Below are positions 4,063-38,877 of a stretch of 44,599 nucleotides of DNA, piece after piece (the first letter of the stretch is position 1; every line of letters starts with the position of its first letter). A program made the position numbers and the translations under genes. A model generated the notes under the pieces. That model ran no database searches and was not told the origin of the DNA. It saw nothing but the letters and a program-made list of their open reading frames with translations. Source of the stretch: Chiloscyllium plagiosum (lineage: Eukaryota); the NCBI RefSeq assembly GCF_004010195.1, contig NC_057721.1:52035656-52080254 (forward strand), read 5' to 3'.

Positions 4063-4889
4063 AGGGAGAATTTTCTGCAGCCCGCAAGAAAGGAAAATGT
4101 CATATGCTGGCTGGCTGAATATTAGATGAGTTTTGGTTTTACAATAGAGGGTTAAAATGTTGAGATTATGTCAGCAACATACCTGAGGCATGTAGCGCCT
4201 CAGGCAACCTTCTAGCTTCCTTACATGTGGAATACATTTGCCTGTCACGAATACTCATTAGTGTGAATATTTTTATAAATGTCTCCAAAATAAATTTAGT
4301 GGCACAGGAAAAACTTGTGGCATTGGTGTAGCTTGTAATACTTCACTTATGGGCAATAGAAAAAGTTGAAACTATCATCAGTTCTATGGCTTAAATCCAT
4401 GAATGCAAATCTCACTGCCAGCTCTCTATATACAGTGCAATTGCTGAAATAACTATGGGTCTCATTCAGCAAGTACACTTAGAGCCTCAAGAGCAAGAGG
4501 AGGGAATGCAACAAAGAAGGACTATTTCCACTAAACAAGTTGCTTTTGCAACCCCAGCAGCAGGCAGCACTAAAGGGAAACATTTTTAAGGATGCAACAA
4601 TCAAGAGAAGGCATCATAGAATATGGGCACTGGCATTTAGCAGCAAAGTTGTGTTCGTGATGCAGAGCTGCATTGCTTTGTCCAGGAGATTTATTTTTAC
4701 CTGCCAGTAGTTGCAGTATTGTCAGCTAATGTCAGGTTTCACCAGTGTAAAGCTTCCCCTGCTGTGGATTTGTGTGTGTGTTTCCCTTATATGTTGCAAG
4801 TGCTTAGATTTTTAGTTGGAATCACGTGAGAAATGGGAAAGAGCAAAAGAGTGTATGTGGTATAAGATGACACAATTAAAATTCTGCCC
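4063..4889. mobile_element. Possible decayed non-autonomous DNA transposon (MITE-like)
   Basis: Imperfect terminal inverted repeats gggagaatttt (4064-4074) and aaaattctgccc (4878-4889). No transposase is recognisable. Confidence 0.3.
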
Positions 4890-5693
4890 ATTATTTCCTG
4901 CCAGTACAGATAATGCCAATTGCACACACACACTTCATTGTTCTCCATCATTTACTATAATCAACACAGTTTAATGTAGGTTTAGTTGAACATAATGGTT
5001 TGTATTTGCCTGGCTTTCAGACAGTGTAATCTTATTGTTTTCTCTTCATGAGTTTATTTTTTAAAATATGGGGCATAATTCATGCTATGTCAGCTTTAAG
5101 TAATGGTCTTTGTTTAAGCAATGGGCTGAAATTGCCACAAAGTGCTTTCTCATGCCATACATTATCTTCTTAGCTGTATTCTGAATCAACTAATCATAGG
5201 GCAATTATATGCTGATGTAGTAAAGGGTAATTTACATGATTTTTAAACTGTGTTATATTTTCAAAACAGACTATATACCTTTAATTGAACTATGTTGTTT
5301 GCTGTGTAGAATATTATGCTAGGATATTCCTAACAAAATTAAAGTACTCTAATAAAAAGTTAGTGATGAATAACTTACAACAACAGAACCTTCCAAACAA
5401 CATAGTAGTGGAAAAGTTCAGTTTAAGAAACACAAGCAAACTTTTAAGGTCTCTGATATGATCACTCAGAATTAGGAAAATATTCATTCCAAACAGGTGC
5501 ATGTCAAACTGTGCAACACATTTGTATGCTACCTTAATTTCTGCCTTGGATACCTCTTCAAAGCTTATAGGACATAGTACACACACACAGGATCTGGCTC
5601 AGCTCCAAAACAGGAATTTACAGTAATAAGACAGAAAACAATGTACAATTATGAAATGACAACTTCCTTTTCATAACTTCGCTGCCATTTCAG

Positions 5694-5699
5694 TTTATT
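5694..5699 (-). promoter_or_regulatory. Candidate polyadenylation signal AATAAA overlapping the stop codon
   Basis: The minus strand reads TTT TAA TAAA at the end of the terminal exon. Confidence 0.3.
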
Positions 5700-5852
5700 A
5701 AAATGTATTTTCATATATTCTCAAAGGAAAGTGACGAATAAAGCTATAATTTGAATGTGAATTTCGATTACAATTCTGACTTGCTACAGGAGTCTCTTGA
5801 GTTCTTAATGTAGTGCCAACATTAACGTAGGTCTGATTGTCTTCAGGTTCTG
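5698..5852 (-). CDS. Terminal cytoplasmic exon with tyrosine motifs
   Basis: Acceptor ctctttcttgttag| (NAGNAG with the following CAG). Translation (A)EPEDNQTYVNVGTTLRTQETPVASQNCNRNSHSNYSFIRHFPLRIYENTF*, containing YVNV, SNYSFI and YENT. Confidence 0.75.
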
Positions 5853-8800
5853 CTAACAAGAAAGAGATGTAGTGTAAGACACAGTTTGCTTTGTTTAATT
5901 CATGTTGTGATATAAATGCACTTAGAACACTGACCGTATCAGAGAATTCTGTACCAATTCTCTAAATGAATGCTGGATGCTATTTTCATTATTTTATACG
6001 AGTACAGGAAAATTTTTTCTCTTCATGAGATTCTTATTATGGCATTGCTAACAAGACCATCATTCAGCTTCAGTCATTTGAGAAACTACTGAGCTCAGGC
6101 ATTAAGAACAGCTCTTTAAAGTCAATTTTAAATTTTAGCTGCCTGCCAACTAATTACTTGAAAACGTGTGATCTAATTATCTCTTTCTTTCACTGAGGGC
6201 TATAAATGTAAGACTACTCACAAATGAATACTCTACAATTTATGGTTGATTGACTATTGCCAGCACACATGGGTCATCTATTGTTACTTATTTACAAGTG
6301 GATGCAGAATGTGGTCTCACAGATCTCTACACTCTTGTGATGTTTGCTGTCTCCTGTTTTATATTGGAAAGGTTAAGTGGACTGTGTAAAAAGGTGTTTT
6401 GTGCATGGTTTAAGGAGGAATTAGCTGAATAATCGACAGAGTCCATTTGTTTCTTCTTTTTTTATTAACTTAGTGCTCCTTTTCTATCAGGTGCTAACTT
6501 TGGTCTTGCTTTTCTATAACAATGTGACATGCACAGATTAAATGCTTCATGTGAGTCAATATACTTGCACTGAACTCTGCAAGTTTAATCGTATAAATCA
6601 CATATACACTTCTACTGCATGAAAGACAGTGGAGAAAGGTAGACCACTTTATCAATGTATATACAGTCTGAACACATGTAATGTATCTTTGTATAAACTA
6701 ATTACAATTCTGGGTTATATTTCTACATAAGCAGAGACAATTTAAAGCAAGTAGTTAATAACACAAAGACATTGACCTGAAATGTTAACTCTGTTTCTCT
6801 CCTCACAGTTACTCCCTGGCCTGCTAAGTATTTCCATCATTCTCTGCTTTTACTTAATGTAAATGGTTACTGGAATTACAAGTAGATTATTTCTGTAGCA
6901 TACAATTCTCTATTTTAGATCCCAGAAATAAATAATTATATAATACTTCACCTCACTTACCTTGTGTATCATCCCCACTATCAACTGAACATTTGTATGT
7001 TGCTGTTAATGTTACAAGATCTGCTAAGATGCTTCACAGGAATGTTACTAAGCAAAATTGGACACCAAGTTGCACAACATGATGCAAAGCAGAGTGTCAG
7101 AAATTTGACCAAACGGTTCGTTTTAATGTGCATATTGATCAAGGAAAGAGAGCTGGAGAGACATAGGGTTTTTGGAGGAAATTCCAGAGTTCAGGGCCTA
7201 GGCCACTTCAAGAATGACCACTATTGAGCTTAAAAGAACCAGCTTTGCGAATTTTATGAAAGGTGAAGCCAACATCAATGTGAAGGACTGCTACGATATG
7301 TTATAGCATAGGACTTACAGAATAAATCAGGCTCTATGCTGCTTCTGTCTTACTCAATTTCACAGAGCACCCCAATTCCTTATTGTGACCTTTTCCAGTT
7401 CCTATAACAATCTTCCATGTCTATTATCTGAATGCCAAAGTGCAACATTTTACTAAGCGATCAAATCCAGTTGGAACTGGTTTGGGACAATTGGTTTCAG
7501 ATATGAAAAGACAGCTTTCTAAACAAGTACAGCCAACTATCAATTGTACAAGTCAAACTATTGTACAGAGTGTATATAAAATTCATTTAGCTCCTGCATA
7601 CATCCACCTACTGGAATCCAGATCAATTCAGAAGAATTGTGCTGAACAGTAATATTACCTCTATTTCGACAAGCTATGTACAAACCTAACTTTCTTGGGT
7701 TATAATCAAGGATTCAAATAATCTGGATCTTACCTTTTTTTGAACGCTTTAATAGCAAGTAAACAACCACACTTATGAGAATTAGACCCAGAGAAGCCAA
7801 CACCCACCATAAGTACGCTCCAACTGCAACACAAAAAATTGAAGGCTTTGTCACAAGCAGGCCATCTGATAACCCCCATAATAAAACACTCCCAAGATCA
7901 AATAAATGTTCCCATTTGTGTTTATTTTGGTCCAAATACACAGAAATATCCATAAATGTGAGAAGTGTAAAGTCAGCTCAAGTGTACAGTAAGCAGCAAG
8001 ATTTTGAAATGCTCCAATGTAAGCAGTTAATATATTGTTAATAAACTCCTGGATAACAAAGTACTGGGTGAATATTTAATTGGGAACAGATCTGGGATAT
8101 CGGTATAATTAACAGTTGATGAAATGCTGTCCTTCATTACTGGGAATTAGTTCAGGGTGAGATAGAGCTGGGCCTAGGGTAAGGAGTAGTTTATGGGAGA
8201 CAGTTATGAATAGTATAATTCGGTGAAGCAGCTGAGGCCTACACCTTCTTTGTGGGACTAGGGAATCCTTTTCATACTTCATACTAGTTATTTGTTCTCA
8301 GGTCAGATCCTGTGTGCCCCTCCAACCACTGCCACAAAACACCACTGCCCCACTCCAACTTCCCACAACACTGACATTGGGTCACATTAATTAATGCAAT
8401 TAAACTTTAACTACCAACTAGGTACGAGGTCTTTATCTATGCTTTGGAACAAGGAATTTCTCAACTCCATTTTAACTAGAATTAATTAGAATTTTCACAT
8501 TGGTTTCTTAATACTTTCTTTGATTGTGTATACATATAATTCCTGTAAATAAACCAGCTGGTAGGTTTAGCCAGAGCAACCAGACAACATTAAGTGGCTT
8601 CATTTCAGTAAATTACTATTTCTGTGCTTTTCATTTTCAAAGTCATGAAATCAATAAGAGTTCAAAGAAATCTGGTCTACTTATCGAATCCGCAATTTTC
8701 TCTGAATACAAATAAGAGTTGAAGATAGAATGAATCCTAACAACCTCTGGACTATTTCATTTTCTCACTACATGGAAGGAGAGAGTGATTTCAAGAAGGG

Positions 8801-11615
8801 AAGAGAACTTTAAAATTGAAATACCTTCACGTTGTTCATCAAATGGTATGGTTAGATTCCTAATGAGAGGGTTTTGCAACATCGAGTGATTCACGAGACA
8901 TGAATATACATCCCCTGCCTTCCAATGAGAGAGGTTGACATAACTTGTTGCAGAATTGCTATTGTTTGAGGCAATAGTAGTTCCAGAGTCAATCCATACT
9001 GAACCTTCTGTTCTTTCTTTTCTCCACCTCAATTGTATACCACCAGGATAGAAGTTCTCTGCTTTACAAACCAATTGTACACAACAGCTATTTTCAGGCT
9101 GAGGAAGAAATGTAACTTCAACCATTGGAGGAACTGGAGAGAAAAAAAATAAAACATGGAGTCATAGAATGATAGACACGTAGAATCCCTACGGTGTAGA
9201 AGCAGGCCATTGGGCCCATCAAGTCCACACTGGCTCTCTGCAGAGCTTCCCAACCTAACCAAACCCTCTACCCTATCCCTGGAGAAAGTGAGGACTGCAG
9301 ATGCTGGAGATCAGAGCTTAAAAATTTGTTGCTGGAAAAGCGCAGCAGATCAGGCAGCATCAAAGGAGCATGAGAATCGACGTTTCGGGTATAAGCCCTT
9401 CTTCAGTAAGGTTCCTATCCCTGGAACCTTATATTTCCTATGAGTAATCCACCTAAGCAGCTCATCCCTGGACAATGGGCAATTTAGCATGTCCAAGCCA
9501 CCTAAACTACAGAATTTAGGAAAACAAACTATTTTATTTTCCATTTCACATGGATATAGTGATGTTGTTCTGTCAACTTAATGCTGTACATAATGCTGTC
9601 TATTAAACACAGGCAAATATGTAGGTTATGATGTTGTTAATAATCTTTAGAAATATTTTTACAAAGATATTCACAATTCATTTCAACTTGTGACCAGCAA
9701 AAGTATTTAAATGAAAATACAACATATATCTATGATTACTGCAATGACAATAATATTCATACATATTTATATAATACAGAGGCATATATAACAAAATAAC
9801 TCATACCTTCTACTATGAGGCTTGTTTTGTTTCCTTCTATTTCTATAGTAGGTGGTGGAATATAGGATGCAATCTTACAATAATATAGATCAGAATCATT
9901 CATTTGGAGATCTTGGATTATAAAGTGAGTGACACCAGTATTGAGCTTCAAAATGATGCTCGTTCGATTATCACAGAGAGGACTTTGTATCAGCGAATCA
10001 TTCAAGTAAGTTATACTACATACAGGATTTTCGACTTGTTTACTCCTCCACCAGGAAACATGCATCCTTTCAGCTTTCAAATGATTGTACCAGTTGGAAA
10101 AAGTGATGCTGACACTTTCTCCCACGAATGCTCTGAGAACACCTGGAGTTTGGAAAATGTGGTCTTCACAATATATTAAAACTGTTCCAAAGAAAAATCA
10201 AAACAAATTAATATCATTAATTAAAAACTAATCAAATATATCTCTGTGAATTTGCTTACTTATTTGAAGACATGGGAGTTTAATATTAAGATTGAAATGA
10301 GAACTTTTACTGAGGAAAACATTACTTGGATTCAGCAGATCAACATTTCTTGTCTGCATTATTTTTCTTTTGAATCAAATCTTTACAGGAAAGAATGCAA
10401 TCAAGGTGTAAAACCCAAATGAATAACACAATCAATGAAGAATCTCTCATCCATTTGGAGTATGTGTGCAGTTTTGGGCCCATATCCCAAGAAGGATGTA
10501 CTGAGCCTGGAGTGTTTTCAGAGGAGGTTCACGAGAATGGTCCCAGGAATGTAAAGCTTAATATATAAGGAACGTTTGAGGACTCTGAGTCTCTACTCGA
10601 TGAAGTTTAGAAGAATGGAGGTGGGGGAGGGGAACATAATTGAAACTTACAGAATACTGAATGGCGTGGACAAACTGGATGTTGGGGAAATGTTTCCATT
10701 GGTAGGAGAGACGAGGACACAGCCTTAGAGTAAAGGAAGATCGTTTAGAATGGAGATAAGGAGAATCTTCTTCAGCCAGAGAGTGCTGAATCTATGGAAT
10801 TCAATGCCACAGAAGGCTATGGAGACCAGGTCATTGAGTATATTTAAGACTGAGATAGATAAGTTTTTGAGGATCAAGGGTTATGGGGAAAAAGGAGGAG
10901 AATGAAGTTGAGAAACTTATTAGTCATGATTGAATAGTGGAGCAGACTCGATGGACTGAATGGCCTAACTTCTGCTCCTATGTCTTATGGAAAAACATTT
11001 CACTGTTTGATTTTATTATACAAGTTTATGATAAAATAGAATCTCTACTGGTCCTTCAGCCCAACAAGTCCACACCAACCCTTCAAAGAATATCCCAATC
11101 AAACCCATTACTCTACATTTACCCTTGACTACCCCTGAACACAATGGACGGTTTAGCATGGCCAATTCACCTAACCTGCGCAACTTTGGATTGTGGGATG
11201 AAACCGGAGCACCCAGAGGAAACCCACGCAAACACAGGGAAAATGTGCAAACTCCACACAGCCAGTCACCCGAGGCTGAAGTTGAACCCAGGTCCCTGGC
11301 ACTGTGAGGCAGTAGTGCTAACCACTGTGCCACCCCCCACGGAGCCACTGTGCTGTTTGTACGTTAAGATGCTTGTATATTAATTTCAAAATGCAAAATT
11401 TATGTAAAATGAAAGTTTACTGAAAGATAAAACAAAATTGTAATGACATATTGGATATACAGAAGAGTTTTAGACAAGTTTAATGTCTGCATAGAGGTAT
11501 ACATGTCTGCTTAAAAAGCGTTGCTCACTTACTAACATACTCACCATGAAGATGTATTCACAATACAGCTAGTGCAGCAGGGGCTTAGGATGAAAGTTTT
11601 TGACCTTGATTGCAT
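5698..11615 (-). CDS. IgSF receptor gene, spliced model L-V(J)-C1-TM-Cyt1-Cyt2: non-rearranging antigen-receptor-like / CD28-like membrane protein, possibly pseudogenised
   Basis: Manually spliced exons 11545-11615, 9807-10181, 8825-9133, 7734-7823, 6961-7002 and 5698-5852, all with GT..AG boundaries. The V, C1, TM and Cyt1 exons are multiples of 3 (375, 309, 90, 42 bp) in phase 1 and give one open frame from V to the stop codon. The leader exon is defective. Confidence 0.8.
6961..7002 (-). CDS. Short cytoplasmic exon 1
   Basis: Strong donor CAAG|gtaagt at 6960. Acceptor attaacag| gives (A)TYKCSVDSGDDTQ; an alternative in-phase acceptor would start the exon at 6984. Phase 1-1. Confidence 0.5.
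7734..7823 (-). CDS. Transmembrane exon
   Basis: Acceptor tttttgtgttgcag|, donor AAAG|gtaaga. Translation (V)GAYLWWVLASLGLILISVVVYLLLKRSKK is a hydrophobic span with no charged residue, followed by a basic stop-transfer segment. Confidence 0.85.
8825..9133 (-). CDS. Ig C1-set domain exon
   Basis: Acceptor ttttttttctctccag|, donor GAAG|gtattt. Translation (V)PPMVEVTFLPQPENSCCVQLVCKAENFYPGGIQLRW...GDVYSCLVNHSMLQNPLIRNL has the canonical C1 motifs LxCxxxxFYPxxIxxxW and YxCxVxH. Confidence 0.92.
9284..9413 (-). mobile_element. Penelope-like short repeat insertion with a 12-bp direct repeat
   Basis: gaaagtgaggactgcagatgctggag...cgacgtttcgggtataagcccttcttcag, flanked by cctatccctgga at 9272-9283 and 9414-9425. 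The family call is inferred from the hammerhead-like motif. Confidence 0.65.
9379..9406 (-). ncRNA. Minimal hammerhead ribozyme core motif
   Basis: The minus strand reads CUGAAGA-A-GGG-cuuaua-CCC-GAAA-C-GUC: CUGANGA box, short stem II, GAAA box and GUC cleavage triplet, as in minimal type-I hammerheads of Penelope-like elements. Confidence 0.55.
9807..10181 (-). CDS. Ig V-set (VJ-type) domain exon
   Basis: Acceptor tttttctttggaacag|, donor GAAG|gtatga. Translation (V)LIYCEDHIFQTPGVLRAFVGESVSITF...HVSWWRSK...PVCS...PLCDNRTSI...FIIQDLQMNDSDLYYCKIASYIPPPTIEIEGNKTSLIVE. It has the C-strand Trp, DSxxYYC and a J-like G strand in one exon; the B-strand Cys is replaced by Phe. Confidence 0.9.
10455..10990 (+). 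mobile_element. CR1-clade LINE 3' fragment in the leader-V intron
   Basis: Decayed LEYxxQFW...QRRFTRMVPG-type sequence, ttcttcagccagagagtg, and the tail gaatggcctaacttctgctcctatgtcttatgg. Confidence 0.8.
11035..11340 (-). mobile_element. HE1-like tRNA-derived SINE, near full length
   Basis: The minus strand begins ggtggcacagtggttagcact (A box) ... ctgggttcaac (B box), followed by the shared core and LINE-like tail. Confidence 0.85.
11545..11615 (-). pseudogene. Candidate leader (signal peptide) exon carrying a 1-nt frameshift and an in-frame TGA
   Basis: ATG at 11615-11613 and donor G|GTGAGT at 11544. The ATG frame reads MQSRSKTFILSP. The phase-1 frame required by the V exon reads ...AALAVL*IHLH (TGA at 11560-11558). 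Removing one C from CCCC and reading TGA as TGG gives a typical signal peptide. Confidence 0.5.
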
Positions 11616-12689
11616 TTGGTTAAATTTACATTAAAATGTCAAAGGTAGTGGGAAAGGAGAATTCTAAAATTAATTCCATTGCATACACCCCAACAATTTT
11701 TTCTGACATTTCAAACTTTTCTCTTTTCAAAGTTAAGACAAATTCCCTTCTAAATAATTTAATTTCCCATGAAAAGCAGACAGGCCAACATTTGGTGCTG
11801 CCCTGTACAATATTTAGGGTAACAGAATGTCTGACAAAAGAACTCCTGCAAGACCTTATTGAAAAAATTCAAAGATCAGAAAGTGACAATATCAGCAGAA
11901 ATGTTCGGTAGATTATTCTTTCAAATTTGTCAGTTTTATCAGTGTAAAGAAGCATCCTTACCCAAACTAATCATGATGAGAATACACTTAGCGAAACAGT
12001 TATCAGATGAAGACATTTTGCTCAGCACCTGTAGAGTCGAAAAGATCGGAACTAGTTCTGGTATGGTAGGTGGATATGTGCAACCAACCTTCTGCTAAAA
12101 ACATGAAGTAGATTGCTGTGGGTTTGTACATCAGCCTTCCTGTTTGAAATGACCTTGCGATGTTTATCTTTAAACATACCTCAACAATGAAATAACTCCT
12201 CAAAAAGAATTAGTGTAAGGCATGTCTAAATGTGAAAATTTATTATTTGTTTCCACTATAGCTAGCAGACCTTGTGTATTTTGCATTAGATTTCCTGGTG
12301 TCTCACTTACACAACAAAAACTATTTCATTTTAGTATTTCAGAATAACTGGGTATGTTGATATGAATTTTCCCTTCTCAAAATAATTATAACTAAACGAT
12401 GAGGGGAAACTTGCATGAGAGAATTTATCATTGCAATAAATGAATCAGGAAAGGGGCTAAGTTAAATATTCACCCAACTAAAAGCGTTGGATTGAAGTGA
12501 GCAATTGTCCCACCCCTTTTCAAGCTGACGCAGCCAGTACACAAATTCAACACTCACTGATTCTGATATACAGCCCAACATGAGGTGTGTGGTTGAGCGG
12601 CTGCAAACCTCATAGGAGCCAAATTCCATCCAGGATAGCATAACTTAGATCTAAACTGTACAACTTAAAGTCAACTTGCTCTTCTTCTA

Positions 12690-30085: not shown

Positions 30086-31197
30086 TTATATAAATGATTT
30101 GGATGGGAACATAGGAGGTATAGCGAGTAGGTTTGCAGATGGCACCAAAATTGGAGGTATACTGGACAGCGAAGAAGGTTACCTCAGAGTACAATGGGAT
30201 CTTGATCAATTGGGCCAATGGGCTGAGGAGTGGCAGATGGAATTTAATTTAGATAAATGCAAGGTGCTGCATTTTGGAAAAGCAAATCAGAGCAGGACTT
30301 ATACACTTAATGGTAAGGTCCTGGGGCATATTGCTGAACAAAGAGATCTTGGAGTGTAGGTTCATAGTTCCTTGAAAGTAGAGTCGCAGGTAGAGTCATA
30401 GAGTCATAGAGATGTACAGCATGGAAACAGACCCTTTGGTCCAACCCGTCCATGCTGACCAGACATCCCAACTCAATCTAGTCCCACCTGCCAGCACCCA
30501 GCCCATATCCCTCCAAACTCTTCCTATTCATATATTGGTAGATAGGATAGTGAAGAAGGCGTTTGGTATGCTCTCCTTTATTGGTCAGAGCATTGAGTAT
30601 AGGAGTTGGGAGGTCATGTTGCAGGTCTACAGGACATTTCTTAGACCACTTTTGAAATATTGCATGTAATTCTGGTGTCCATCCTATCAGAAGGATGTTG
30701 TGAAACTTGAAAGGGTTCAGAAAAGATTTACAAGGTTGTTGCCAGGGTTGGAGGATTTGAGCTACAGGGAGAGGCTGAATAGGCTGGAGCTATTTTATCA
30801 GAGTGTCGGAGGCTGAGGGGTCACCTTATAGAGGTTTATAATATCATGACAGGCATGGATAGGATAAATAGATGAGGTCTTTTCCTTGGGGTGGCGGAGT
30901 CCAGAACTAGACGGCATAGGTTTAGGGTGAGAGGGGAAGGGTATTAAAGGGACCTAAGGGGCAATGTTTTCATGCAGAGGGTGGTACGTGTATGAAATGA
31001 GCTGCCAGAGGAAGTGGTGGAGGCTGGTCTAATTGCAGCATTTAAAAGGCATCTGAATGGGTATATGAAAATGAAGGGTTTAGAGGGATATGGACCAAGT
31101 GCTGACAAATGGGACTAGATTAGATTGGGATATCTGATCAGCATGGATGTGTTGGACTGAAGGGTTTGTTTCCGTGCTGTATGTCTCTATGACTCTA
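30086..31197 (+). mobile_element. CR1-clade LINE 3' portion (RT FADD region to tail) with a nested inverted CR1 tail
   Basis: IASRFADGTKIGG...WAEEWQMEFNLDKCKVLHFG. An inverted 3'-end insert at 30395-30536 lies between ggtaga repeats. Confidence 0.9.
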
Positions 31198-31494
31198 AGT
31201 CCACTAAGAATCTTGTATGTTTCAATAAGGTTGCCTTTCATTCTTTTAACAGTCCAATCAGGAGAGCCCAACTTTCTCAATCTCTCCTCATAAGAAAACC
31301 CCTCCATGCCTAGGATTCACTTCATGAACCTTTTCCAGATTGCTTGTAATGCTAGTATATCTTTCCTTAGATAAGAAAAGCTAAACTATTCATAATATTC
31401 CAGCTTTAGCAGTTTTCCCTATTTTAGATTCCATTCCTTTTGAAATAATGGCCAATATTCCATTTGTCATCTCTATTTTCTGCTGAACTTAGAT

Positions 31495-31730
31495 ATCTGT
31501 CTGGGGTTTGCACACTCCCTGTGTTTGTGTGGGTTTCCTCTGGGTGCTCCGGTTTCTTCCCACAATCCAAAGATGTGCAGGTCAGGTGAATTGGATATGC
31601 TAAATTGCCCATAGTATTCAGGGATGATGTGGGTTAGGTGCATTACTCAGGGGTAAACGTAGAGTAATAGGCTAGGGAGTTGGGTTTGGGTAGGATACTC
31701 TTTGGTGGGTCAGTGTAGGGATTCTATGAT
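31495..31730 (+). mobile_element. HE1-like SINE, 5'-truncated
   Basis: gtttgcacactccc...gggtttcctctgggtgctccggtttc...tgtagggattctatga. Confidence 0.75.
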
Positions 31731-32019
31731 ATGAAATATTACAGGCAAGGAGGAATATTGAAATTTATTATTTTTTGCGAATGATGTTTCATTCATTATT
31801 GAAGTCAGTATCATGTCGTAAGTAAGTCATTACTATTTAACTGTGTCTTCAATGGGAGCTCCCTGATCTCTGTGTGTGTAATGGATGGAGTGCAATAGAT
31901 GATTGAGATGATGAGGTATAGTCATGTTTCTTATACAATATTATGTAAATCTCTCCGAAACACTAATTTAAACAAGCCTCTCATCATTATAAACATGTTC
32001 TGATGTTTGATGCTTTCAT

Positions 32020-34890
32020 TGTATGCTGTGATACTTCTAAATACTGTCTAGCCAACTCCCCCACTCTATTTAATCATTCCCTAAAGTTTGACACGTAGTC
32101 CAAATATGTGGCCTCTGAATTCTGATTTACCAATTTCTCCTTAATCAATTTTACCGGTTCTCTCACTAAAATTAAATCAAATGGACTGAATTTGGTCAAT
32201 TAATTTGGTACATCTCTGATTGCAAAAAGCATAAGAGAATGATCTTATCCCAAGCATTTGAATAGTCTTGATGATAAGCCCTCAACATAGTCTTTAATGT
32301 CTGATGCCACCTTTCTAGCGCTCCCTGCAACTCTGGATGGTATGCAGTACACACCCCTAAATGACCCCCTGGTGGTAGTTCATGGGCCACCCGCAACATC
32401 TCCTCTCTATAACCCACTGGCAAACAACTTGATGAATTTCTGCCCATTTCTCATCTGCCTGAATATGTGATGGTTTCCATTTCCTCATTAAGATGTAATT
32501 TTTAAGATAGTAGCATTCAGGGATACATTCAGATTCTTTTTCTGTGTATGCCTGCTGATACAATTATTTTAAATTTTAATTTCTACTATAAATCAATTAA
32601 TTTATCTGAGCTAAAGATATCTGTATTGTCATCTATCTGCTTCTGGCTTGTCTCAACCATTTGATCAAAAAGGGTCTCTGCTAATTCCACTTTAACTTTC
32701 TTATCTGTACTCTTTGATCTCTCCTGTTTCAACTGGTGACTTTGTGACCCCATTATCAAACAGTCAGGAAAAATATGTGTCCTGAGTTTCCACTGGCTTT
32801 TCAACCACAGTAGGCAGCATTCCTACCTGTGAACCAGCTATATCATTAGCAAGGACAAATTGAATTCTTGGAGCTGAGAATTTATCCAGTATTCCTACCA
32901 TGACTTCTTCACTCTTCTCTGGACATTCTAACCTCACTCAACATAATTGAGCGTTTCTTGTCACACTGTGAATTCCTGTTATTAGTACCTTTTCTGGCAA
33001 TAGTCCTTCAGCATTATCTATCTCCTCATCTTTCAACATCAGAGATTGAGAGGATCATGTATCTCTTAATATTGTAACCGCTTTACCAGCTGCTCCTGAC
33101 CTATGCGAATAAACTTTACCTTTGCAGGTATATGGTTTAAGAAGTTCTGGCACTCCCTCCTTAACCAACCTCTGACCAGGTTGTACATTCTGGTGCAGCT
33201 TTCTAGCCTCCACTGTGCTTTCCGCAATGACTCCATCAAAATTCACTGGCTTATCCTGTTTTCCTTTGTCTGGCTTCCCAGTGCTTTTTCTAACCCACCA
33301 ACACTGTGATTTCATGTAGCAGTGAAAACACAGGAGTTTTTTATCTTCTCTTGCCCCTTCAAGGGTTTCCTTTTTACTCTGCGTAAATTATCTTTATGAT
33401 CTTCACCGAGATCCACCTTTCCCTTCCCATGTGAGGGATTCTCTTTTCCCCAATTTCTATCCCTCACGGATTGAAGTTGATGTTGGAAACCAAACTTTGA
33501 TTTATGGACCAACTCATAACCATCAGCCATTGCAGCTGTGAATCTGCTCTTCCACATGAGTTCTCACTATTTCAGGAAGTGAATTTTTGAACTCCTCCAA
33601 AATAATCATCTCTCTAAGAGCATCTCTGCTTTGCTGTATTTTTAATGCCCTTATCCACCTTTCAAAAGTATTTTCATTAATCCTTTCAAACTCAGTGTAG
33701 GTTTGACCAAGGTCCCTCTTTAGATTCCTGAAACACTGTCTGTAGGCTTCTGGCACAAGCTCATATGCACTTAAGATGGCTTTCTTCACCTCCTCATATG
33801 CCCCAGATACCTCTTCGGATAGTGATGTGAATACCTCACCAGGTCTACTTATAAGTTTTGTTTGGATCAACAAAACACATATAGCCACTGGACACCACAT
33901 TTGTTTAGCCACCTTTTCAAATGAGATGAAGAAGTCTTCTACGTCCTTCTCATCAAATTTAGGCAATGCTTGAATATATTTAAACAGATCCCCACCAGGC
34001 CTTTGGTTACCATGGGTTTGTTCATCCTCAATCTCTTCCTTACTAAGCTTACCTTCAGCCTTCATCTCCATCCTTTTAAGCTGACTTTCCTGTCTAAGTG
34101 CCAATTTCTGAAGTTCAATCTCCCTCTCTTTTTCCTTTCCTCTCTCTCCTTTTCTCTCTCTTCTCTTTCTTTTTGTTCTGTTAATGCGATTCTGTCATTT
34201 TCTTTTTTCTCTGCTTTTAATCATAATTCAAACCATTCATTTCTATTGCCCTTTCCTTGGTCTTTTGCCTCTCACTCAAGCTGTTTCATTTTCAGTTGAA
34301 TTTTATCCATCTCTAAAGATTCTGATGTCATTTCCTGCAAATGTAAATGCTGAGCTGCTGCTGTAATTATCTGTCCTTTCCTCACGGAAGGAGACAGCTC
34401 CAACTCCAGCTTGTCTGCTAATTCCAGCAGCTTGGCCTTAATCACCTTTTGTAAAATCCTCAAAGTCACTTCTTCCACTCTCAGTAAACTCTTGGTGACT
34501 GAAAGAGCCATTGCTATCCCAAGCACTATTTAAACCAACCAAATTCAAAACCCAGAACAAATGACACAAACACCTGCCACTCACTGCTTTCGAGTCCAGC
34601 AACCCTAATCCCAAATCAGAACTAAAGAACAAATCCTACAAAGAACCAAACCCCTGCAAACATTTCAAGAAAGTAGCCCAGTCCCTAACATTGCTTGTTT
34701 GTTTTAAGCAGGATTAAAGTGGATATTCCTGGAATGATGCAGCTGGTGAAACTGATTACTTTTGAAATAAATAGAATTTATTTACAAGATTACCAAGTGA
34801 AACAAACAAGAGAGAACAGAATATATAATAACCTATTCGAAAATCCAACAGATTATCCCAACTTAATGATGCTGTTCCAAATACTTGCAA
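32020..34890 (-). mobile_element. Gmr1-like Gypsy LTR retrotransposon, degenerate (gag/SCAN-like capsid, protease, integrase)
   Basis: Gag LPKFDEKDVEDFFISFEKVA...AYELVPEAYRQCFR...IILEEFKNSLPEIVRTHV; degenerate CFHC knuckle; protease ILRDT; integrase AHELPPGGHLGV and AYHPELQGALERWHQTLKTML directly after the protease, with no RT between them. Confidence 0.85.
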
Positions 34891-35689: not shown

Positions 35690-38600
35690 AGGAATGCCAG
35701 GAGTCCATTCTGAGGCTGGGAATTGAGTCCGCACTGAGGCCATGAATCCGAGTCTGCACCGAGGCCGGGAATCCGAGTCCACGCTGAGGCTGGGAATCCG
35801 AGTTCGTGCCGAGGCTGGAAATCCGAGTCTGCGCCGAGGCTGGGAAACCGAGTGGGCACCGAGGCTAGGAATCCGTGTCCGCGCTGAGGCTGGGAATCCA
35901 ACCCCATGCTGAGGCCGGGAATCTGAGTCCACACTGCAGCCGGGAATCCGAGTCCACACTGCGGCCGGGAATCCGGGTACGCACTAAGGCCGGGAATCCG
36001 AGTCCACGCTGAGGCCGAGAATCTGAATCTGCACCGAGGCCGGGAATCCGAGTCTGCGCTGAGGCTGGGAATCTGACTCCATGCTAAGGCCGGGAATCTG
36101 AATCCACACTGAGGCTGGGAATCATAGTCCACACTGAGGCTGCAAATCCGAGTCTGTGCTGAGGTTGGAAATCCGAGTCCGTGCTGAGGTTGGAAATCTG
36201 AGTCAGCTCTGAGGCCGGTAATCCGTGTCCGCTCTGAGGCCGGGAATCCATGTCCGCGCTGAGGCTGGGAATCCGAGTCCGCACTGAGGATTGGAATCCG
36301 AGTCTGCGCTCAGTCCGGGAATCCGAGTCTGCACCGAGGCCGGGATTCCGAGTCTGCATTGAGGCCGGGAATCCGAGTCCATGTTGATGCTGGGAATCCG
36401 AGTCCGTGCTGAGGCTGGGAATCCGAGTCTGCACTGAGGCCGAGAATCCGAGTCTGCACTAAGGCTGAGAATCCGAGTCCGTGCTGACGCTGGAAATCCA
36501 AGTTTGCGCCGAGGCTAGGAATCTGAGTCGGTGCTGAGGCTGGAATTCCAAGTCTGCACCAAGGCCAGGAATCAAGTGCGTACTGAGGCCAGGAATCCGA
36601 GTCCATGCTGAAGCCGGGAATCCAAGTGTGTACCGAGGTGGGAATCCGTGTGTGCGCTGATGCCAGGAATCCACGTCTACACTGAGGCTGAAAATCCTAG
36701 TCTATGCTGAGACCGGAAAACCGAGTCCACTCTGAGGCCGGACCTTCAAGTCCGCGTTGAGGCAGGAAATCCGAGTCCACACTGAGGCTGGGAATCTGAG
36801 TTCGTACTGAGGCCGGGAATCCGAGTCCGCGCTGATGCCGGGCATCCGAGTCCACACTGAGGCTGAAATTCCGAGTCAGCATTGAGGCCGGGAATCCGAC
36901 TCCATGCTAAGGCCAGGCATCCGGGTACGCACTAAGGCCGGGAATCCGAGTCTGCACTGAGGCTGGAAATCCGAGTCTACGCTGAGGCTGGGAATCCAAC
37001 TCCATGCTAAGGCCGGGAATCCGAGTCCACTGTGAGGCTGGGAATCTGAGTCCACTCTGAGGCCGGGAATCCGAGCCCACACCGAGGCCAGAATCAGTCT
37101 GCACCGAGGTTGGGATTCCGAGTCTGCACTGAGGCTGGGAATCCGAGTCCACGCTGAGGCTGGGAATCCAAGTTCGTGCCGAGGCTGGGAATCCGAGTCC
37201 GCGCTGATGCCGGGAATCCGAGACCACACTGAGGCTGAAATTCCGAGTCAATACTGAGGCTGGGAATCCGACTCCATGCTAAGGCCAGGAATCCAAGTCC
37301 ACATTGAGGCTGGGAATCCGAGTCCGCGCTGAGGTCGGGAATCCAAGTCCGCGCTTGGGCCGGGAATCTGAGTCCGCACTGAGATAGGGAATCCGAGTCC
37401 ACGCTGAGGCCAGGAATCCGATTCCATACCAAGGCCAGGAATACGAGTCCGTGCTGAGGCCGAGAATCTGAATCTGCACCGAGGCCGGGAATCCGAGTCT
37501 GCGCTGAGGCTGGGAATCCAACTCCATGCTAAGGCTGGGAATCCAAGTCCGCACTGAGGCTTGGAATCCGAGTCTGCGCTCAGTCCGGCAATCCAAGTCT
37601 GCACAGAGGCCGGGATTCCGAGTCTACGTTGAGGCTGGGAATCCGAGTCCATGTTGAGGCTGGGAATCCGAGTCCGTGCTGAGGCTGGGAATCCGAGTCC
37701 GTGCTGAGGCTGGGAATCCGAGTCTGCACTGAGGCCGGGAATCCGAGTCCGTGCTGAGGCTGGGAATCCGAGTCTGCACTGAGGCTGGGAATCCGAGTCT
37801 GCACTGAGGCCGGGAATCCGAGTCTGCACTAAGGCTGAGAATCCGAGTCCATGCTGAGGCTGGAAATCCAAGTCTGTGCCGAGGCTAGGAATCTGAGTCG
37901 GTGCTGAGGCTGGAATTCCAAGTCTGCACCAAGGCCGGGAATCAAGTGCGTACAGAGGCCGGGAATCCGAGTCCATGCTGAGGCCGGGAATCCAAATGCG
38001 TACCGAGGCCGGGAATCCGTGTGTGCGCTGATGCCAGGAATCCACGTCTACACTGAGGCTGAAAATCCTAGTCTATGCTGAGACCGGAAATCCGAGTCCA
38101 CTCTGAGGCCGGGACACCAAGTCCGGGTTGAGGCAGGGAATCCGAGTCCACACTGAGGCTGGGAATCTGAGTTCGTACTGAGGCCGGGAATCTGAGTCCG
38201 CGCTGATGCCGGGCATCCGAGTCCACACTGAGGCTGAAATTCCGAGTCAGCACTGAGGCCGGGAATCCGACTCCATGCTAAGGCCAGGAATCCGAGTCCA
38301 CTTTGAGGCTGGGAATCCGATTCCATACCAAGGCCAGGAATCCGAGTCTGCGCTGAGGCCGGGAACCTGAGTCTGCACTGATGCCGGGAATCCGAGTCCG
38401 CGCTGAGGCCGGGAATCCGAGTCCGCACCGAGGCCAGGAATCTGAGTCTGCACTGAGGCTGGGAATCTGAGTCTGTGCCAAGGCCGGGCATCTGAGTCTG
38501 TACTGAGGCCGGGCATCTGAGTCCATACTGAGGCCAGGAATCTGATTTCGTGGTGAGGCCAGGAATACGAGCCCATGTTGAGGCTGGAAATCGAGTCCAT

Positions 38601-38877
38601 GCTGAGGCCAGGAATCCTAGTCTGTGCTGATGCCGGGAATCCGAGTCTACACTCAGGTTGGGAGTCTGAGTCCGCACTGAGGCCGGAAATCCGAGTCCAC
38701 ACTGAGGCTGGGAGTCCGAGTCCATATTGAGGCCATGAATCCGAGTCCACGCTGATGCCGGGAATCCGAGTCCACACTGTGGCTGGAAATCCGAGTGAGC
38801 ACCGAGGCCGAAATTCGAGTCTGTGCTGAGGCCGGGAATCTGAGTCTGTACTGAGGCCGGGAATCCGAGTCCACCCT
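35690..38877. repeat. 25-bp GC/CpG-rich minisatellite, roughly 125 copies; consensus GAGGCYGGGAATCCGAGTCYRCRCT
   Basis: The 25-nt periodicity is directly visible, and the minus-strand ORFs show the corresponding 25-aa periodicity. Confidence 0.95.

What the first reader, a model, noticed from the sequence alone, without database searches (positions are those of the whole stretch)
5698..11615. Non-rearranging V(J)-C1 receptor: antigen-receptor-like ectodomain with its own signalling tail
Seen in sequence: V and a J-like G strand are fused in a single exon with no recombination signal sequence at its edges, followed by a true C1-set exon, an uncharged TM and a tail of about 70 aa with tyrosine motifs. 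Established: C1-set domains are largely restricted to Ig/TCR, MHC/B2M, tapasin, SIRP and a few B7 members, and germline VJ-C1 genes (PRARP- and VJC1-type) are discussed as relics of the pre-RAG antigen receptor. Inference: this may be an uncharacterised shark family of that type which, unlike TCR/Ig, signals through its own tail. The ORF track shows only disconnected pieces of it.
Basis: partly seen in the sequence, partly recalled or inferred. Interest (0 to 1): 0.85.

Follow-up and report, generated by a model that had tools for sequence, protein, structure and literature searches.

The report
Shark CD28-like receptor with extra C1 domain
This is a real, expressed, non-rearranging shark receptor gene that joins a CD28/CTLA-4-like tip to an antibody-type constant domain and its own tyrosine tail, an uncharacterised old family that may link co-stimulatory receptors to antigen receptors.

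Summary
The observation largely holds. On the minus strand lies an intact gene, RefSeq LOC122555561 of Chiloscyllium plagiosum, named only "uncharacterized protein". It has five coding exons, not six: leader 12016-11962, V 10181-9807, C1 9133-8825, TM 7823-7734 and tail 5849/5852-5698. All are phase 1 with AG/GT borders.

The tail is 55-56 aa, not about 70.

Contigs of two runs (RNA by guess) carry the V-C1, C1-TM and TM-tail junctions. V and the G strand share one exon. No RSS heptamer lies within 1.1 kb, and the window holds no nonamer.

The V domain's best solved relatives are CD28 and CTLA-4, with a PPP FG loop and an extra Cys pair. It lacks the canonical B-strand Cys. The C1 domain is closest to Ig constant domains.

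Three tail tyrosines are conserved across shark orders: two YxN motifs and SNYSFI.

The family is old. Paralogue groups A and B each include a chimaera, and sturgeon and paddlefish carry relatives.

No paper I could search names it. The 2024 CD28-family survey describes only single-V members.

PRARP and the tetrapod VJ-C1 papers were not readable.

An earlier scan note on this window (s1-883882) had flagged the CD28-like signature.

The parts
11962..12016 (-). Leader exon (ATG at 12016-12014; 18 codons plus 1 nt, phase 1).
   Evidence: tblastn of the RefSeq model P0001 matches residues 1-18 at 100%. A GT donor follows. The sequence is conserved in orthologues as MSS..NCF.K.
11546..11615 (-).
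   Evidence: Its frame ends in phase 2 (read), while the V exon needs phase 1. Among the 15 joints shown, none joins it to 10181 (15 more were not shown). The 128 and 99 nt of contig records 5 and 11 that lie beyond 10182 did not lay on 10183-11689.
9807..10181 (-). V exon (375 nt). It holds the last leader residues, the whole V domain and the G strand.
   Evidence: Pfam V-set E 2.5e-9. Best PDB matches are CD28 and CTLA-4. AG and GT borders. The joint 9133->9807 is seen in X1 and X2.
9850..9858 (-). PPP of the FG loop (residues 127-129 of P0001), aligned to the PPP of the CD28/CTLA-4 MYPPPY loop.
   Evidence: HMMER alignments to CD28 and CTLA-4. P127 and P129 are invariant and P128 nearly invariant across 18 family members.
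8825..9133 (-). C1-set exon (309 nt).
   Evidence: Pfam C1-set E 1e-10. Best PDB matches are Ig light- and heavy-chain constant domains and UrIg2. All atlas hits shown carry C1-set. The joints 9133->9807 and 7823->8825 flank it.
7734..7823 (-). Transmembrane exon (90 nt): an uncharged TM followed by KRSKK.
   Evidence: Matches P0001 residues 247-274 at 100%. The joints 7823->8825 and 5849->7734 flank it.
5698..5852 (-). Cytoplasmic exon up to the stop codon (5700-5698). A NAGNAG acceptor at 5852 or 5849 gives isoforms X1 and X2.
   Evidence: P0028 and P0001 differ by one Ala. The joint 5849->7734 is seen in X1 and X2.
5818..5829 (-). YVNV (Tyr284), a membrane-proximal YxN motif.
   Evidence: A YxN motif at this site (YVN or YAN) is present in 8 of 8 shark group A proteins with a tail (alignment). 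The motif scan covered only the last 75 residues and so missed it in P0042.
5737..5754 (-). SNYSFI (Tyr311), which fits the ITIM consensus [S/I/V/L]xYxx[I/V/L].
   Evidence: SNYSFI in 7 and SNYCLI in 1 of 8 shark group A proteins.
5701..5718 (-). IYENTF (Tyr322), a C-terminal YxN motif.
   Evidence: IYEN, VYEN or IYQN in 7 of 8 shark group A proteins; the Heptranchias model has IIHEK instead.
4427..5697 (-). 3' untranslated region (lower limit approximate).
   Evidence: X2 contig record 8 (1543 nt) continues 1264 nt beyond position 5691.

Best explanation
An intact, transcribed, germline-joined (non-rearranging) gene for a type I membrane glycoprotein of 326-327 aa.

Shown:
- The domain order is signal peptide, V domain, C1 domain, an 8-residue link, uncharged TM, and a 55-56 aa tail.
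- The V domain belongs by sequence to the CD28/CTLA-4 superfamily. It has YxC-x6-PPP-x5-G in the F strand and FG loop, and an extra Cys pair.
- The C1 domain is of the immunoglobulin constant-region type.
- The gene is conserved in sharks and a chimaera.

Inferred mechanism:
- It acts as a co-signalling receptor on leucocytes.
- The PPP-bearing FG loop contacts a B7-like ligand, as the MYPPPY loop does in CD28 and CTLA-4.
- The C1 domain raises the binding face about one Ig domain further from the membrane. Its conserved extra Cys (C160/C161) may mediate dimerisation.
- After ligation, Src-family kinases phosphorylate Tyr284 (YVNV) and Tyr322 (YENT), creating Grb2/GADS-type SH2 docking sites.
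- Tyr311 (SNYSFI) offers an ITIM-like site for SHP-1 or SHP-2. Output may therefore be mixed, as in BTLA.
- RefSeq predicts an in-frame isoform that skips the TM exon and would be soluble. I did not see it in the contigs.
For: Gene structure and expression:
- Searches give five exons, all phase 1, with AG/GT borders.
- One search shows three spliced joints in contigs of two runs from two studies. Spliced contigs have depth 40-57, against 8-17 for the contigs that carry introns.

Domains:
- Searches support the V-set and C1-set assignments.

CD28-type V domain:
- of 5 PDB sequences with E <= 0.001, 3 are CD28 and 1 is CTLA-4.
- for the Carcharodon orthologue's V domain, 22 of 28 hits with E <= 0.01 are CD28 or CTLA-4.
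- the paddlefish relative's V domain hits PD-1 first.
- hhalign of the family V profile against a V-only paddlefish 'CD28-like' protein gives probability 98.8 and E 4e-17, and the alignment runs through the FG loop and G strand.
- the same profile against a TCR-like V gives probability 96.7 and E 4e-10, and the alignment stops at the F strand.
- atlas leads include PD-1 and CTLA-4 clusters.
- The motif fits the CD28X signature and, in paralogue B, the CD28H-like signature. Both are quoted from PMC11599192 section 16.

Conservation:
-.

Background:
- The ligand-binding role of MYPPPY is stated in PMC3057841 (passages).
Against: - The E-values linking the V exon to CD28 and CTLA-4 are modest (1.7e-4 to 6e-4). 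Antibody VL domains follow closely at about 1e-3.
- For paralogue B, TCR-alpha V scores as well as CD28 and CTLA-4.
- A family profile searched against the PDB was dominated by multi-domain antibody and pIgR chains and did not single out CD28.
- The gene fails one defining feature of the CD28 family as published, a single V ectodomain. It also lacks the GxG bulge motif and the YxxxxT TM motif.
- The canonical B-strand Cys is missing, which is unusual for this family.
- No ligand, cell type, tissue or phosphorylation data exist here. The runs with spliced contigs are RNA only by guess, and the single-cell RNA run gave no reads.
Confidence: 0.55

Rival explanations
1. It is a relic of the pre-RAG antigen receptor, a sister of the Ig/TCR chains. 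Its resemblance to CD28 and CTLA-4 is either shared ancestry of all VJ-type V domains or convergence in the FG loop.
For: - The C1 exon is closest to Ig light- and heavy-chain constant domains and to UrIg2.
- It has a V-C1 order, a split leader and phase-1 exons, as antigen-receptor genes do.
- Paralogue B keeps GxGTxLxV, and its V domain hits TCR-alpha at 1.2e-6, level with CD28.
- RefSeq auto-names paralogue B 'immunoglobulin kappa light chain-like'.
Against: - For this gene and its Carcharodon orthologue, CD28 and CTLA-4 outrank every Ig or TCR V domain.
- hhalign favours the V-only CD28-like protein by 7 orders of magnitude in E-value, and only that alignment covers the FG loop and G strand.
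- UrIg2 matches only through its C domains.
- The TM has no charged residue for CD3 or CD79 pairing. The tail carries CD28-like YxN placed close to the membrane.
Confidence: 0.2
2. It belongs to a V-C1 (or V-C) family that is already described and that I could not read about. Candidates are the tetrapod VJ-C1 genes of Ohta et al. 2019, PRARP (Fu et al. 2019) and a SIRP-family member.
For: [quoted passage not shown]
- Salamander V(PPP)-C1 proteins exist.
- RefSeq names the Heptranchias orthologue SIRP-alpha-like.
Against: - No SIRP chain appears among the 60 best PDB matches of the V exon.
- Of the 10 non-family hits looked up by name, none was from a bird or reptile, although PRARP was defined in chicken. 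The species of 9 further hits were not checked.
- The 2024 CD28-family paper lists PRARP and SIRP merely as other VJ-type genes and says nothing about a CD28-like V-C1 gene.
- SIRP has V-C1-C1, not V-C1.
- Six accession and locus names of the family occur in none of the papers searched.
Confidence: 0.13
3. It is a B7- or butyrophilin-like ligand (V-C1 ectodomain) rather than a receptor of the CD28 type.
For: V-C1 plus TM is the B7 architecture (PMC3057841 passage). The atlas hits for the C1 exon include clusters carrying the CD80-like C2-set_2 family.
Against: - No B7, PD-L or butyrophilin chain is among the best PDB matches of the V exon or of three relatives' V domains.
- The PPP loop is a receptor-side feature.
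- The tail has three conserved tyrosine motifs.
Confidence: 0.07
4. It is a decaying or non-functional gene. The loss of the canonical V-domain disulphide would be a sign of this.
For: The B-strand Cys is absent in 7 of 7 shark orthologues with a complete V domain. In Scyliorhinus the F-strand Cys is lost as well.
Against: - The reading frame is open across five exons.
- Spliced transcripts exist.
- The tree follows the species order.
- The tail and C1 are conserved between orders at 56-71%.
- The loss of the Cys is itself old and stable.
Confidence: 0.03

Closest known systems
CD28/CTLA-4 family as defined by Quiniou et al. 2024 (PMC11599192): CD28, CTLA4, ICOS, CD28H, CD28HL1-3, CD28X, PD-1
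   Same: - It is the best sequence relative of the V domain.
- It shares YxC-x6-PPP-x5-G, as in the CD28X and CTLA-4 signature. Paralogue B has YxC[Q/E]xxxEIPPP, as in the CD28H-like signature.
- The first Cys of the extra pair aligns with CTLA-4's.
- The leader, V, TM and tail exon layout is the same.
- A tyrosine YxN motif sits shortly after a basic stop-transfer sequence.
   Different: - A whole C1-set domain lies between V and TM, whereas the paper states that every member has a single V domain.
- The second Gly of GxG is lost in this gene.
- There is no YxxxxT in the TM.
- There is no stalk Cys.
- The canonical B-strand Cys is lost.
- Synteny is unknown.
UrIg / UrIg2 (non-rearranging shark VJ-C1 genes; PMC12227049, PDB 9dmx)
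   Same: - Both are germline-joined VJ exons followed by Ig-type C1 domains.
- Both are found in cartilaginous fish.
- Both are auto-annotated as light-chain-like.
- The UrIg2 C domains are among the best matches of the C1 exon.
   Different: - UrIg has three C domains and only a secreted form. UrIg2 has nine C domains (passages).
- Their V domains are not among the V exon's matches.
- This gene has one C1, a TM and a tyrosine tail, and it has relatives in ray-finned fish.
Immunoglobulin light chains and TCR chains
   Same: The V-C1 order, the split leader, the C1 motifs (FYP..I.L.W and Y.C.V.H) and a J-like T-x-L-x-V ending of the V domain.
   Different: - No RSS and no separate J segment.
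- An uncharged TM with its own tail.
- A PPP FG loop encoded in the germline.
SIRP family
   Same: A VJ-type V domain followed by C1-set domain(s), a TM and a tyrosine-motif tail. RefSeq's automatic name for one orthologue is SIRP-alpha-like.
   Different: SIRP is V-C1-C1. No SIRP chain is among the 60 best PDB matches of the V exon. SIRP has no PPP loop (recalled, not tested).
BTLA (by tail logic only)
   Same: It combines Grb2-type YxN with ITIM-type motifs in one tail (recalled, not from a call).
   Different: BTLA has a single Ig domain of a different set. PMC3057841 places it outside the CD28/CTLA-4 group (passage).

Membership tests
CD28/CTLA-4 family (Quiniou et al. 2024) | Single extracellular IgSF V domain | tested here: not met
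   A C1-set exon (Pfam E 1e-10) is spliced between the V and TM exons.
CD28/CTLA-4 family (Quiniou et al. 2024) | P-x-P / PPP motif in the CDR3-like FG loop at YxC-x6 | tested here: met
   The sequence is YYCKIASYIPPP. The PPP aligns to the PPP of CD28 and CTLA-4. It is invariant or nearly invariant in 18 family members.
CD28/CTLA-4 family (Quiniou et al. 2024) | GxG bulge motif in the G strand (CTLA4, CD28X and chondrichthyan CD28/CTLA4 homologues) | tested here: not met
   This gene has G-N-K-T. The 7 paralogue B sequences have GxG.
CD28/CTLA-4 family (Quiniou et al. 2024) | Tyrosine signalling motif shortly after the TM (YMNM, YVKM or YxNx type) | tested here: met
   YVNV begins 8 residues after KRSKK. 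A YxN motif at this site is conserved in 8 of 8 shark orthologues with a tail.
CD28/CTLA-4 family (Quiniou et al. 2024) | YxxxxT dimerisation motif in the TM | tested here: not met
   The TM is VGAYLWWVLASLGLILISVVVYLLL. No Thr lies five residues after either Tyr.
CD28/CTLA-4 family (Quiniou et al. 2024) | Conserved synteny with one of the family's marker blocks (for example cd28/ctla4/icos; slbp-tacc3-tmem129; pudp-sts-anos1) | not testable with these tools
The 44.6 kb window holds no other gene, only repeats.
CD28/CTLA-4 family (Quiniou et al. 2024) | V domain closest in sequence to family members | tested here: met
   CD28 and CTLA-4 are the top PDB matches for this gene and its Carcharodon orthologue. 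PD-1 is top for the paddlefish relative. hhalign gives 98.8% to a V-only CD28-like protein. The margins over Ig and TCR V domains are modest.
Rearranging antigen receptors (Ig/TCR) | Separate V and J segments flanked by recombination signal sequences | tested here: not met
   V and the G strand lie in one exon, spliced to C1. No heptamer lies within 1.1 kb and no nonamer occurs in the window.
Rearranging antigen receptors (Ig/TCR) | C1-set constant domain of the Ig/TCR type | tested here: met
UrIg / UrIg2 | VJ domain related to the UrIg V domain, followed by several C1 domains | tested here: not met
   There is one C1 only. UrIg2 (9dmx) matches through its C domains only and is absent from the 60 best V-exon matches.
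SIRP | V-C1-C1 ectodomain with a SIRP-type V domain | tested here: not met
   There is one C1. No SIRP chain is among the 60 best PDB matches of the V exon.
PRARP (Fu et al. 2019) | Orthology to chicken PRARP1/2 (VJ-type V domain, ITIM tail) | not testable with these tools
   The paper is not held and I had no PRARP sequence. Indirect evidence only: of the 10 non-family hits that I looked up by name, none was from a bird or reptile.

The most novel reading that the evidence does not exclude
This family is a surviving V-C1 form of the ancestor that CD28-family co-receptors share with antigen receptors. It comprises groups A and B in cartilaginous fish and one gene in sturgeon and paddlefish. 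On this reading the single-V CD28, CTLA-4, CD28H and PD-1 receptors arose from a VJ-C1 receptor by loss of the C1 exon. [quoted passage not shown]
Probability: 0.2. Interest if true: 0.85.

Novelty: new variant of a known kind. Interest (0 to 1): 0.62.

Why it matters
[quoted passage not shown] Quiniou et al. [quoted passage not shown] Yu et al. [quoted passage not shown]

This gene couples a CD28-type V domain to an Ig-type C1 domain in a single non-rearranging receptor. It is conserved from chimaeras and sharks to sturgeons. That makes the question testable by synteny, domain trees and ligand binding.

It also adds a candidate co-signalling receptor to the shark immune system. Its ligand and its sign (activating, inhibitory or both) are unknown.

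Tried and rejected
- An upstream in-frame acceptor at 7865 would add 14 residues with a stalk Cys to the TM exon. It was rejected because both runs join at 7823, as do the RefSeq models.
- Paralogous exons elsewhere in the window: tblastn of the four exon peptides gave only self-matches; all others had E >= 0.58.
- Profile searches of the V and C1 alignments against the PDB were not discriminating. Whole-sequence scores sum over multi-domain antibody, pIgR and heavy-chain entries, so I fell back on single-sequence searches and hhalign.
- The alignment-based protein search returned 12 proteins. It added two sturgeon sequences but did not even return the group B members of its own query, so it says little about range.
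- The search with the salamander protein found only one further newt protein. No bridge to birds or reptiles was found.
- The single-cell RNA run X11 gave no reads on the stretch, so strand, ends and cell type remain unknown.
- Literature: seven searches found no paper naming this family. Fu 2019, Flajnik 2023 and Ohta 2019 are not held. Supplements, which hold the sequence sets of PMC11599192 and the gene tables of PMC10751288, were closed and may list these loci.
- I made no tree against curated Ig, TCR, SIRP or B7 references, because I held no such sequences as stored proteins and typed none from memory.

Full report
WHAT IS THERE

The finding lies on the minus strand. Reading 5500-11800 and the ORF list shows four open pieces with AG/GT borders.
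- A V-like piece at 10181-9807.
- A C1-like piece at 9133-8825.
- A hydrophobic piece at 7823-7734.
- A terminal piece ending at the stop codon 5700-5698.

Pfam scores the V piece as V-set (E 2.5e-9, 37.7 bits, cut-off 26). It scores the next piece as C1-set (E 1e-10, 42.3 bits, cut-off 21). The ICOS-type V-set_2 model scores 16.1 bits, below its cut-off. The TM and tail pieces match nothing above cut-off.

A HMMER search of the V exon against 1.84 billion representative proteins returned 26 proteins with E <= 0.001. The first is a 326-aa protein that is 100% identical over the exon. The cluster look-up names it XP_043557521.1, "uncharacterized protein LOC122555561 isoform X2" of Chiloscyllium plagiosum. 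Its siblings are X1 (327 aa) and X3 (297 aa). The gene is therefore annotated but uncharacterised.

GENE MODEL

tblastn of the RefSeq proteins on the window places residues 1-18 at 12016-11963. The remaining residues fall on the four pieces above.

All five exons have canonical AG and GT borders and are in phase 1 (55, 375, 309, 90 and 152/155 nt).
- X1 and X2 differ by a NAGNAG acceptor (5852 or 5849), which adds or drops one Ala.
- X3 skips the 90-nt TM exon in frame.

The phase-1 reading there has a stop four codons upstream (read). It cannot serve the V exon.

The tail is 55-56 residues, and there are five coding exons, not six.

TRANSCRIPTS

One run search and one laying of 6000 bases (5690-11689) were allowed. 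Contigs of runs X1 and X2 were informative. Both are from coded organism A, about 1-3% diverged from the window. They come from two studies, and their RNA label is a guess.

They carry three joints, all with CT..AC ends, which read GT..AG on the minus strand.
- 9133->9807 (side 255 in both runs).
- 7823->8825.
- 5849->7734.

Spliced contigs have depths of 40-57. Contigs that carry the introns have depths of 8-17.

X2 record 8 links C1, TM and tail and then runs 1264 nt further, so the 3' UTR is long. Records 5 and 11 run 128 and 99 nt past the V exon's 5' border.

Run X3 (organism B, few differences) holds a 340-nt V-exon contig with no differences. The single-cell RNA run X11 gave nothing.

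I could not lay the true leader and the tail in one 6000-base call, and I chose the tail. The acceptor at 5852 and the TM-skipped form were not among the joints shown. Fifteen more joints were not shown.

NON-REARRANGING

V and the G strand share one exon, and that exon is spliced straight to C1. The only CACAGTG or CACTGTG heptamers between 9000 and 12200 are at 11300, 11323 and 11346, inside an interspersed repeat. No ACAAAAACC or GGTTTTTGT nonamer occurs in the window.

THE V DOMAIN

phmmer of the V exon against PDB sequences gave 5 sequences with E <= 0.001. Three are CD28, one is CTLA-4 and one is an scFv.

The CD28 alignment covers the E-F strands and the FG loop. The window's PPP sits on the PPP of MYPPPY. 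The CTLA-4 alignment covers residues 12-122. The first Cys of an extra pair (C73) aligns with a CTLA-4 Cys. The second (C88) lies about five residues from its counterpart.

There is no Cys between residues 23 and 73, so the canonical B-strand Cys is absent.
- The same holds in 7 of 7 shark orthologues with a complete V domain.
- 7 of 7 group B proteins and 2 of 2 sturgeon/paddlefish proteins keep it.

Results for relatives' V domains:
- Carcharodon orthologue: 22 of 28 hits with E <= 0.01 are CD28 or CTLA-4.
- Paddlefish relative: PD-1 takes four of the top five places.
- Carcharodon group B protein: the result is mixed, with a tandem VL chain at 6e-8, TCR-alpha at 1.2e-6, CD28 at 4.4e-6, CTLA-4 at 4.6e-6 and ICOS at 5e-5.

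hhalign of an 8-sequence V profile gave two comparisons.
- Against a V-only paddlefish protein that RefSeq calls CD28-like: probability 98.8 and E 4e-17 over 106 columns, through the FG loop and G strand.
- Against a coelacanth TCR-like V domain: probability 96.7 and E 4e-10, ending at the F strand.

That paddlefish protein's tail carries YEDM, the motif which PMC11599192 (section 16, read in full) gives for CD28X.

The same section gives the CDR3-region signatures YxCx6PPPx4/5GxG (CD28X) and YxC[E/K/Q/N]xxxEIP[P..][P..] (CD28H-like).
- This gene reads YYC-KIASYI-PPP-TIEIE-GNK. It fits the first signature except for the second Gly.
- Group B reads YFCQxSIEIPPP....GxG. It fits both.

The protein-atlas leads include PD-1 and CTLA-4 clusters. 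These are leads only.

Against all this, the margins over antibody V domains are small for this gene. A family profile against the PDB did not single out CD28.

THE C1 DOMAIN

phmmer of the C1 exon finds lambda-type CL and CH domains and UrIg2 among the best 60. The profile does the same. All atlas hits shown carry C1-set.

The motifs FYPGGIQLRW and YSCLVNHS are in the sequence. Two adjacent Cys (C160, C161) lie five and six residues before the B-strand Cys.
- C161 is kept in group A and in sturgeon and paddlefish.
- Group B has none.
- Whether they form an interchain bond is inference.

TM AND TAIL

The TM has no charged residue. The tail's three tyrosines are conserved across shark orders.
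- A membrane-proximal YxN (YVNV, YVNI, YVNF or YANF).
- SNYSFI in 7 of 8 sequences and SNYCLI in 1.
- A C-terminal YEN or YQN in 7 of 8.

Sturgeon and paddlefish tails have LVYENL and IYDN.

The ectodomain has eight N-x-S/T sequons.

THE FAMILY

Word-based searches found orthologues in Rhincodon (82%), Stegostoma (76%), Carcharodon (61%), Heterodontus (54%), Scyliorhinus canicula and S. torazame (57%) and Heptranchias (58%). C. punctatum is in the same 90% cluster.

One search also gave the following.
- A Callorhinchus protein (41% in the V domain).
- A second group in Callorhinchus, Pristis, Hemitrygon, Amblyraja, Carcharodon, Stegostoma and Pristiophorus. The Callorhinchus member, LOC103180135, has a curated mRNA record, NP_001279395.
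- A paddlefish protein.
- An axolotl protein with two V(PPP)-C1 units.

Searches added two sturgeon proteins and one newt protein.

All source names are "uncharacterized" or automatic labels: kappa light chain-like, lambda-like, SIRP-alpha-like, HLA-DM beta-like, class I-like.

A maximum-likelihood tree of the V+C1 region was built from 21 rows, with the axolotl protein cut into its two units by script.
- Group A: 9 rows, support 99/97.
- Group B: 7 rows, support 87/97.
- Each group holds the chimaera as the first branch and follows the species order.
- The A/B duplication therefore predates the split of holocephalans and elasmobranchs.
- Sturgeon and paddlefish fall outside A+B with weak support (73/81).
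- The salamander genes sit on a very long branch, and their membership is uncertain.

No ray or skate member of group A appeared. With these searches that is no proof of loss.

Identity to the Carcharodon orthologue by domain is V 58%, C1 71%, TM 60% and tail 62%.

SURROUNDINGS

The rest of the window holds no other Ig exon. It contains the following.
- Reverse-transcriptase fragments.
- A SCAN/gag-like ORF.
- A 25-bp minisatellite of about 127 copies at 35710-38872.

Two stretches inside the gene's introns (about 9090-9490 and 10490-11490) have enormous contig depth in all three runs. They are interspersed repeats.

Earlier scan notes place another receptor-like gene 30 kb beyond the window and an NKp30-like gene 7.3 Mb before it. 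I did not test either.

LITERATURE

Quiniou et al. 2024 (PMC11599192; abstract, sections 14, 16 and 23 read) define nine CD28-family members.
[quoted passage not shown] - In the main text, 'C1-set' occurs only in a methods list.

Verissimo et al. 2023 (PMC10751288; passages) and the UrIg2 paper (PMC12227049; passages) discuss NKp30, PRARP, UrIg, UrIg2 and "several VJ-C1-type genes in tetrapods". They mention no CD28-like V-C1 gene.

Yu et al. [quoted passage not shown] They infer a common ancestor of the CD28/CTLA-4 family and antigen receptors.

Six locus and accession names of the family occur in none of the papers searched.

Fu 2019 (PRARP), Flajnik 2023 (UrIg) and Ohta 2019 are not held, and supplements were closed. 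Prior description there cannot be excluded.

My recollection is that chicken PRARP is V-only and that its orthologues were described as V-C2. That comes from memory, not from a call.

VERDICT

It is better stated as a CD28/CTLA-4-superfamily V domain mounted on an Ig-type C1 domain, in an old gnathostome family with two paralogues in cartilaginous fish.

It fails the published single-V criterion, so I do not file it as a CD28-family member. It most likely works like one: ligand binding through the PPP loop and signalling through YxN and ITIM-like tyrosines. That step is inferred.

I rate it a new variant of a known kind, with interest 0.62.

Noticed in passing
window 10040-10060 (B-strand region of the V exon); alignment A3: The canonical B-strand Cys of the V domain is replaced by Phe, Tyr or Ser in 7 of 7 shark group A proteins with a complete V domain. 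The F-strand Cys is kept in 8 of 9 group A proteins; Scyliorhinus has lost it too. Group B and the sturgeon and paddlefish proteins keep the pair. This is an old, stable loss of the Ig disulphide in one paralogue.
   Followed up: partly
window 9073-9078 (Cys160-Cys161 of the C1 exon): Two adjacent extra Cys lie just before the B strand of the C1 domain (three in Rhincodon). They are conserved in group A, one is kept in sturgeon and paddlefish, and group B has none. They may form an interchain bond. With structure prediction closed, this could not be modelled.
   Followed up: no
window 7824-7865: An upstream in-frame AG acceptor would extend the TM exon by 14 residues that include a Cys (a CD28-like stalk Cys). 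Neither the RefSeq models nor the contigs use it. Organism A has a 12-nt insertion behind position 7838.
   Followed up: partly
window 9090-9490 and 10490-11490: Two intronic stretches have contig depths up to about 350,000 in all three runs, with many loose ends. They are copies of highly repeated, transcribed interspersed elements. The upstream one carries the three RSS-like heptamers.
   Followed up: no
window 35710-38872: A 25-bp minisatellite of about 127 copies (75% matches) lies in the only GC-rich part of the window (GC 0.59). It produces long spurious ORFs on the minus strand.
   Followed up: partly
window 30099-34104 and 40078-40602: Retroelement debris: a SCAN/gag-like ORF (Pfam SCAN, E 1.7e-8) at 33526-34104, and reverse-transcriptase fragments at 40078-40602 and 30099-30356.
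   Followed up: partly
P0009 (Ambystoma) and P0049 (Lissotriton): Salamanders encode V(PPP)-C1 proteins. The axolotl model has two tandem V-C1 units before one TM and a short tail without tyrosine motifs. They sit on a very long branch in the tree and may be a separate family or the tetrapod VJ-C1 genes mentioned in the literature.
   Followed up: partly
records holding P0040/P0005 (Carcharodon) and P0039/P0006 (Stegostoma): Group A and group B genes sit on records of identical length in each species (118,536,060 and 82,076,947 bases). They are therefore probably on the same chromosome. The distance between them is unknown.
   Followed up: no
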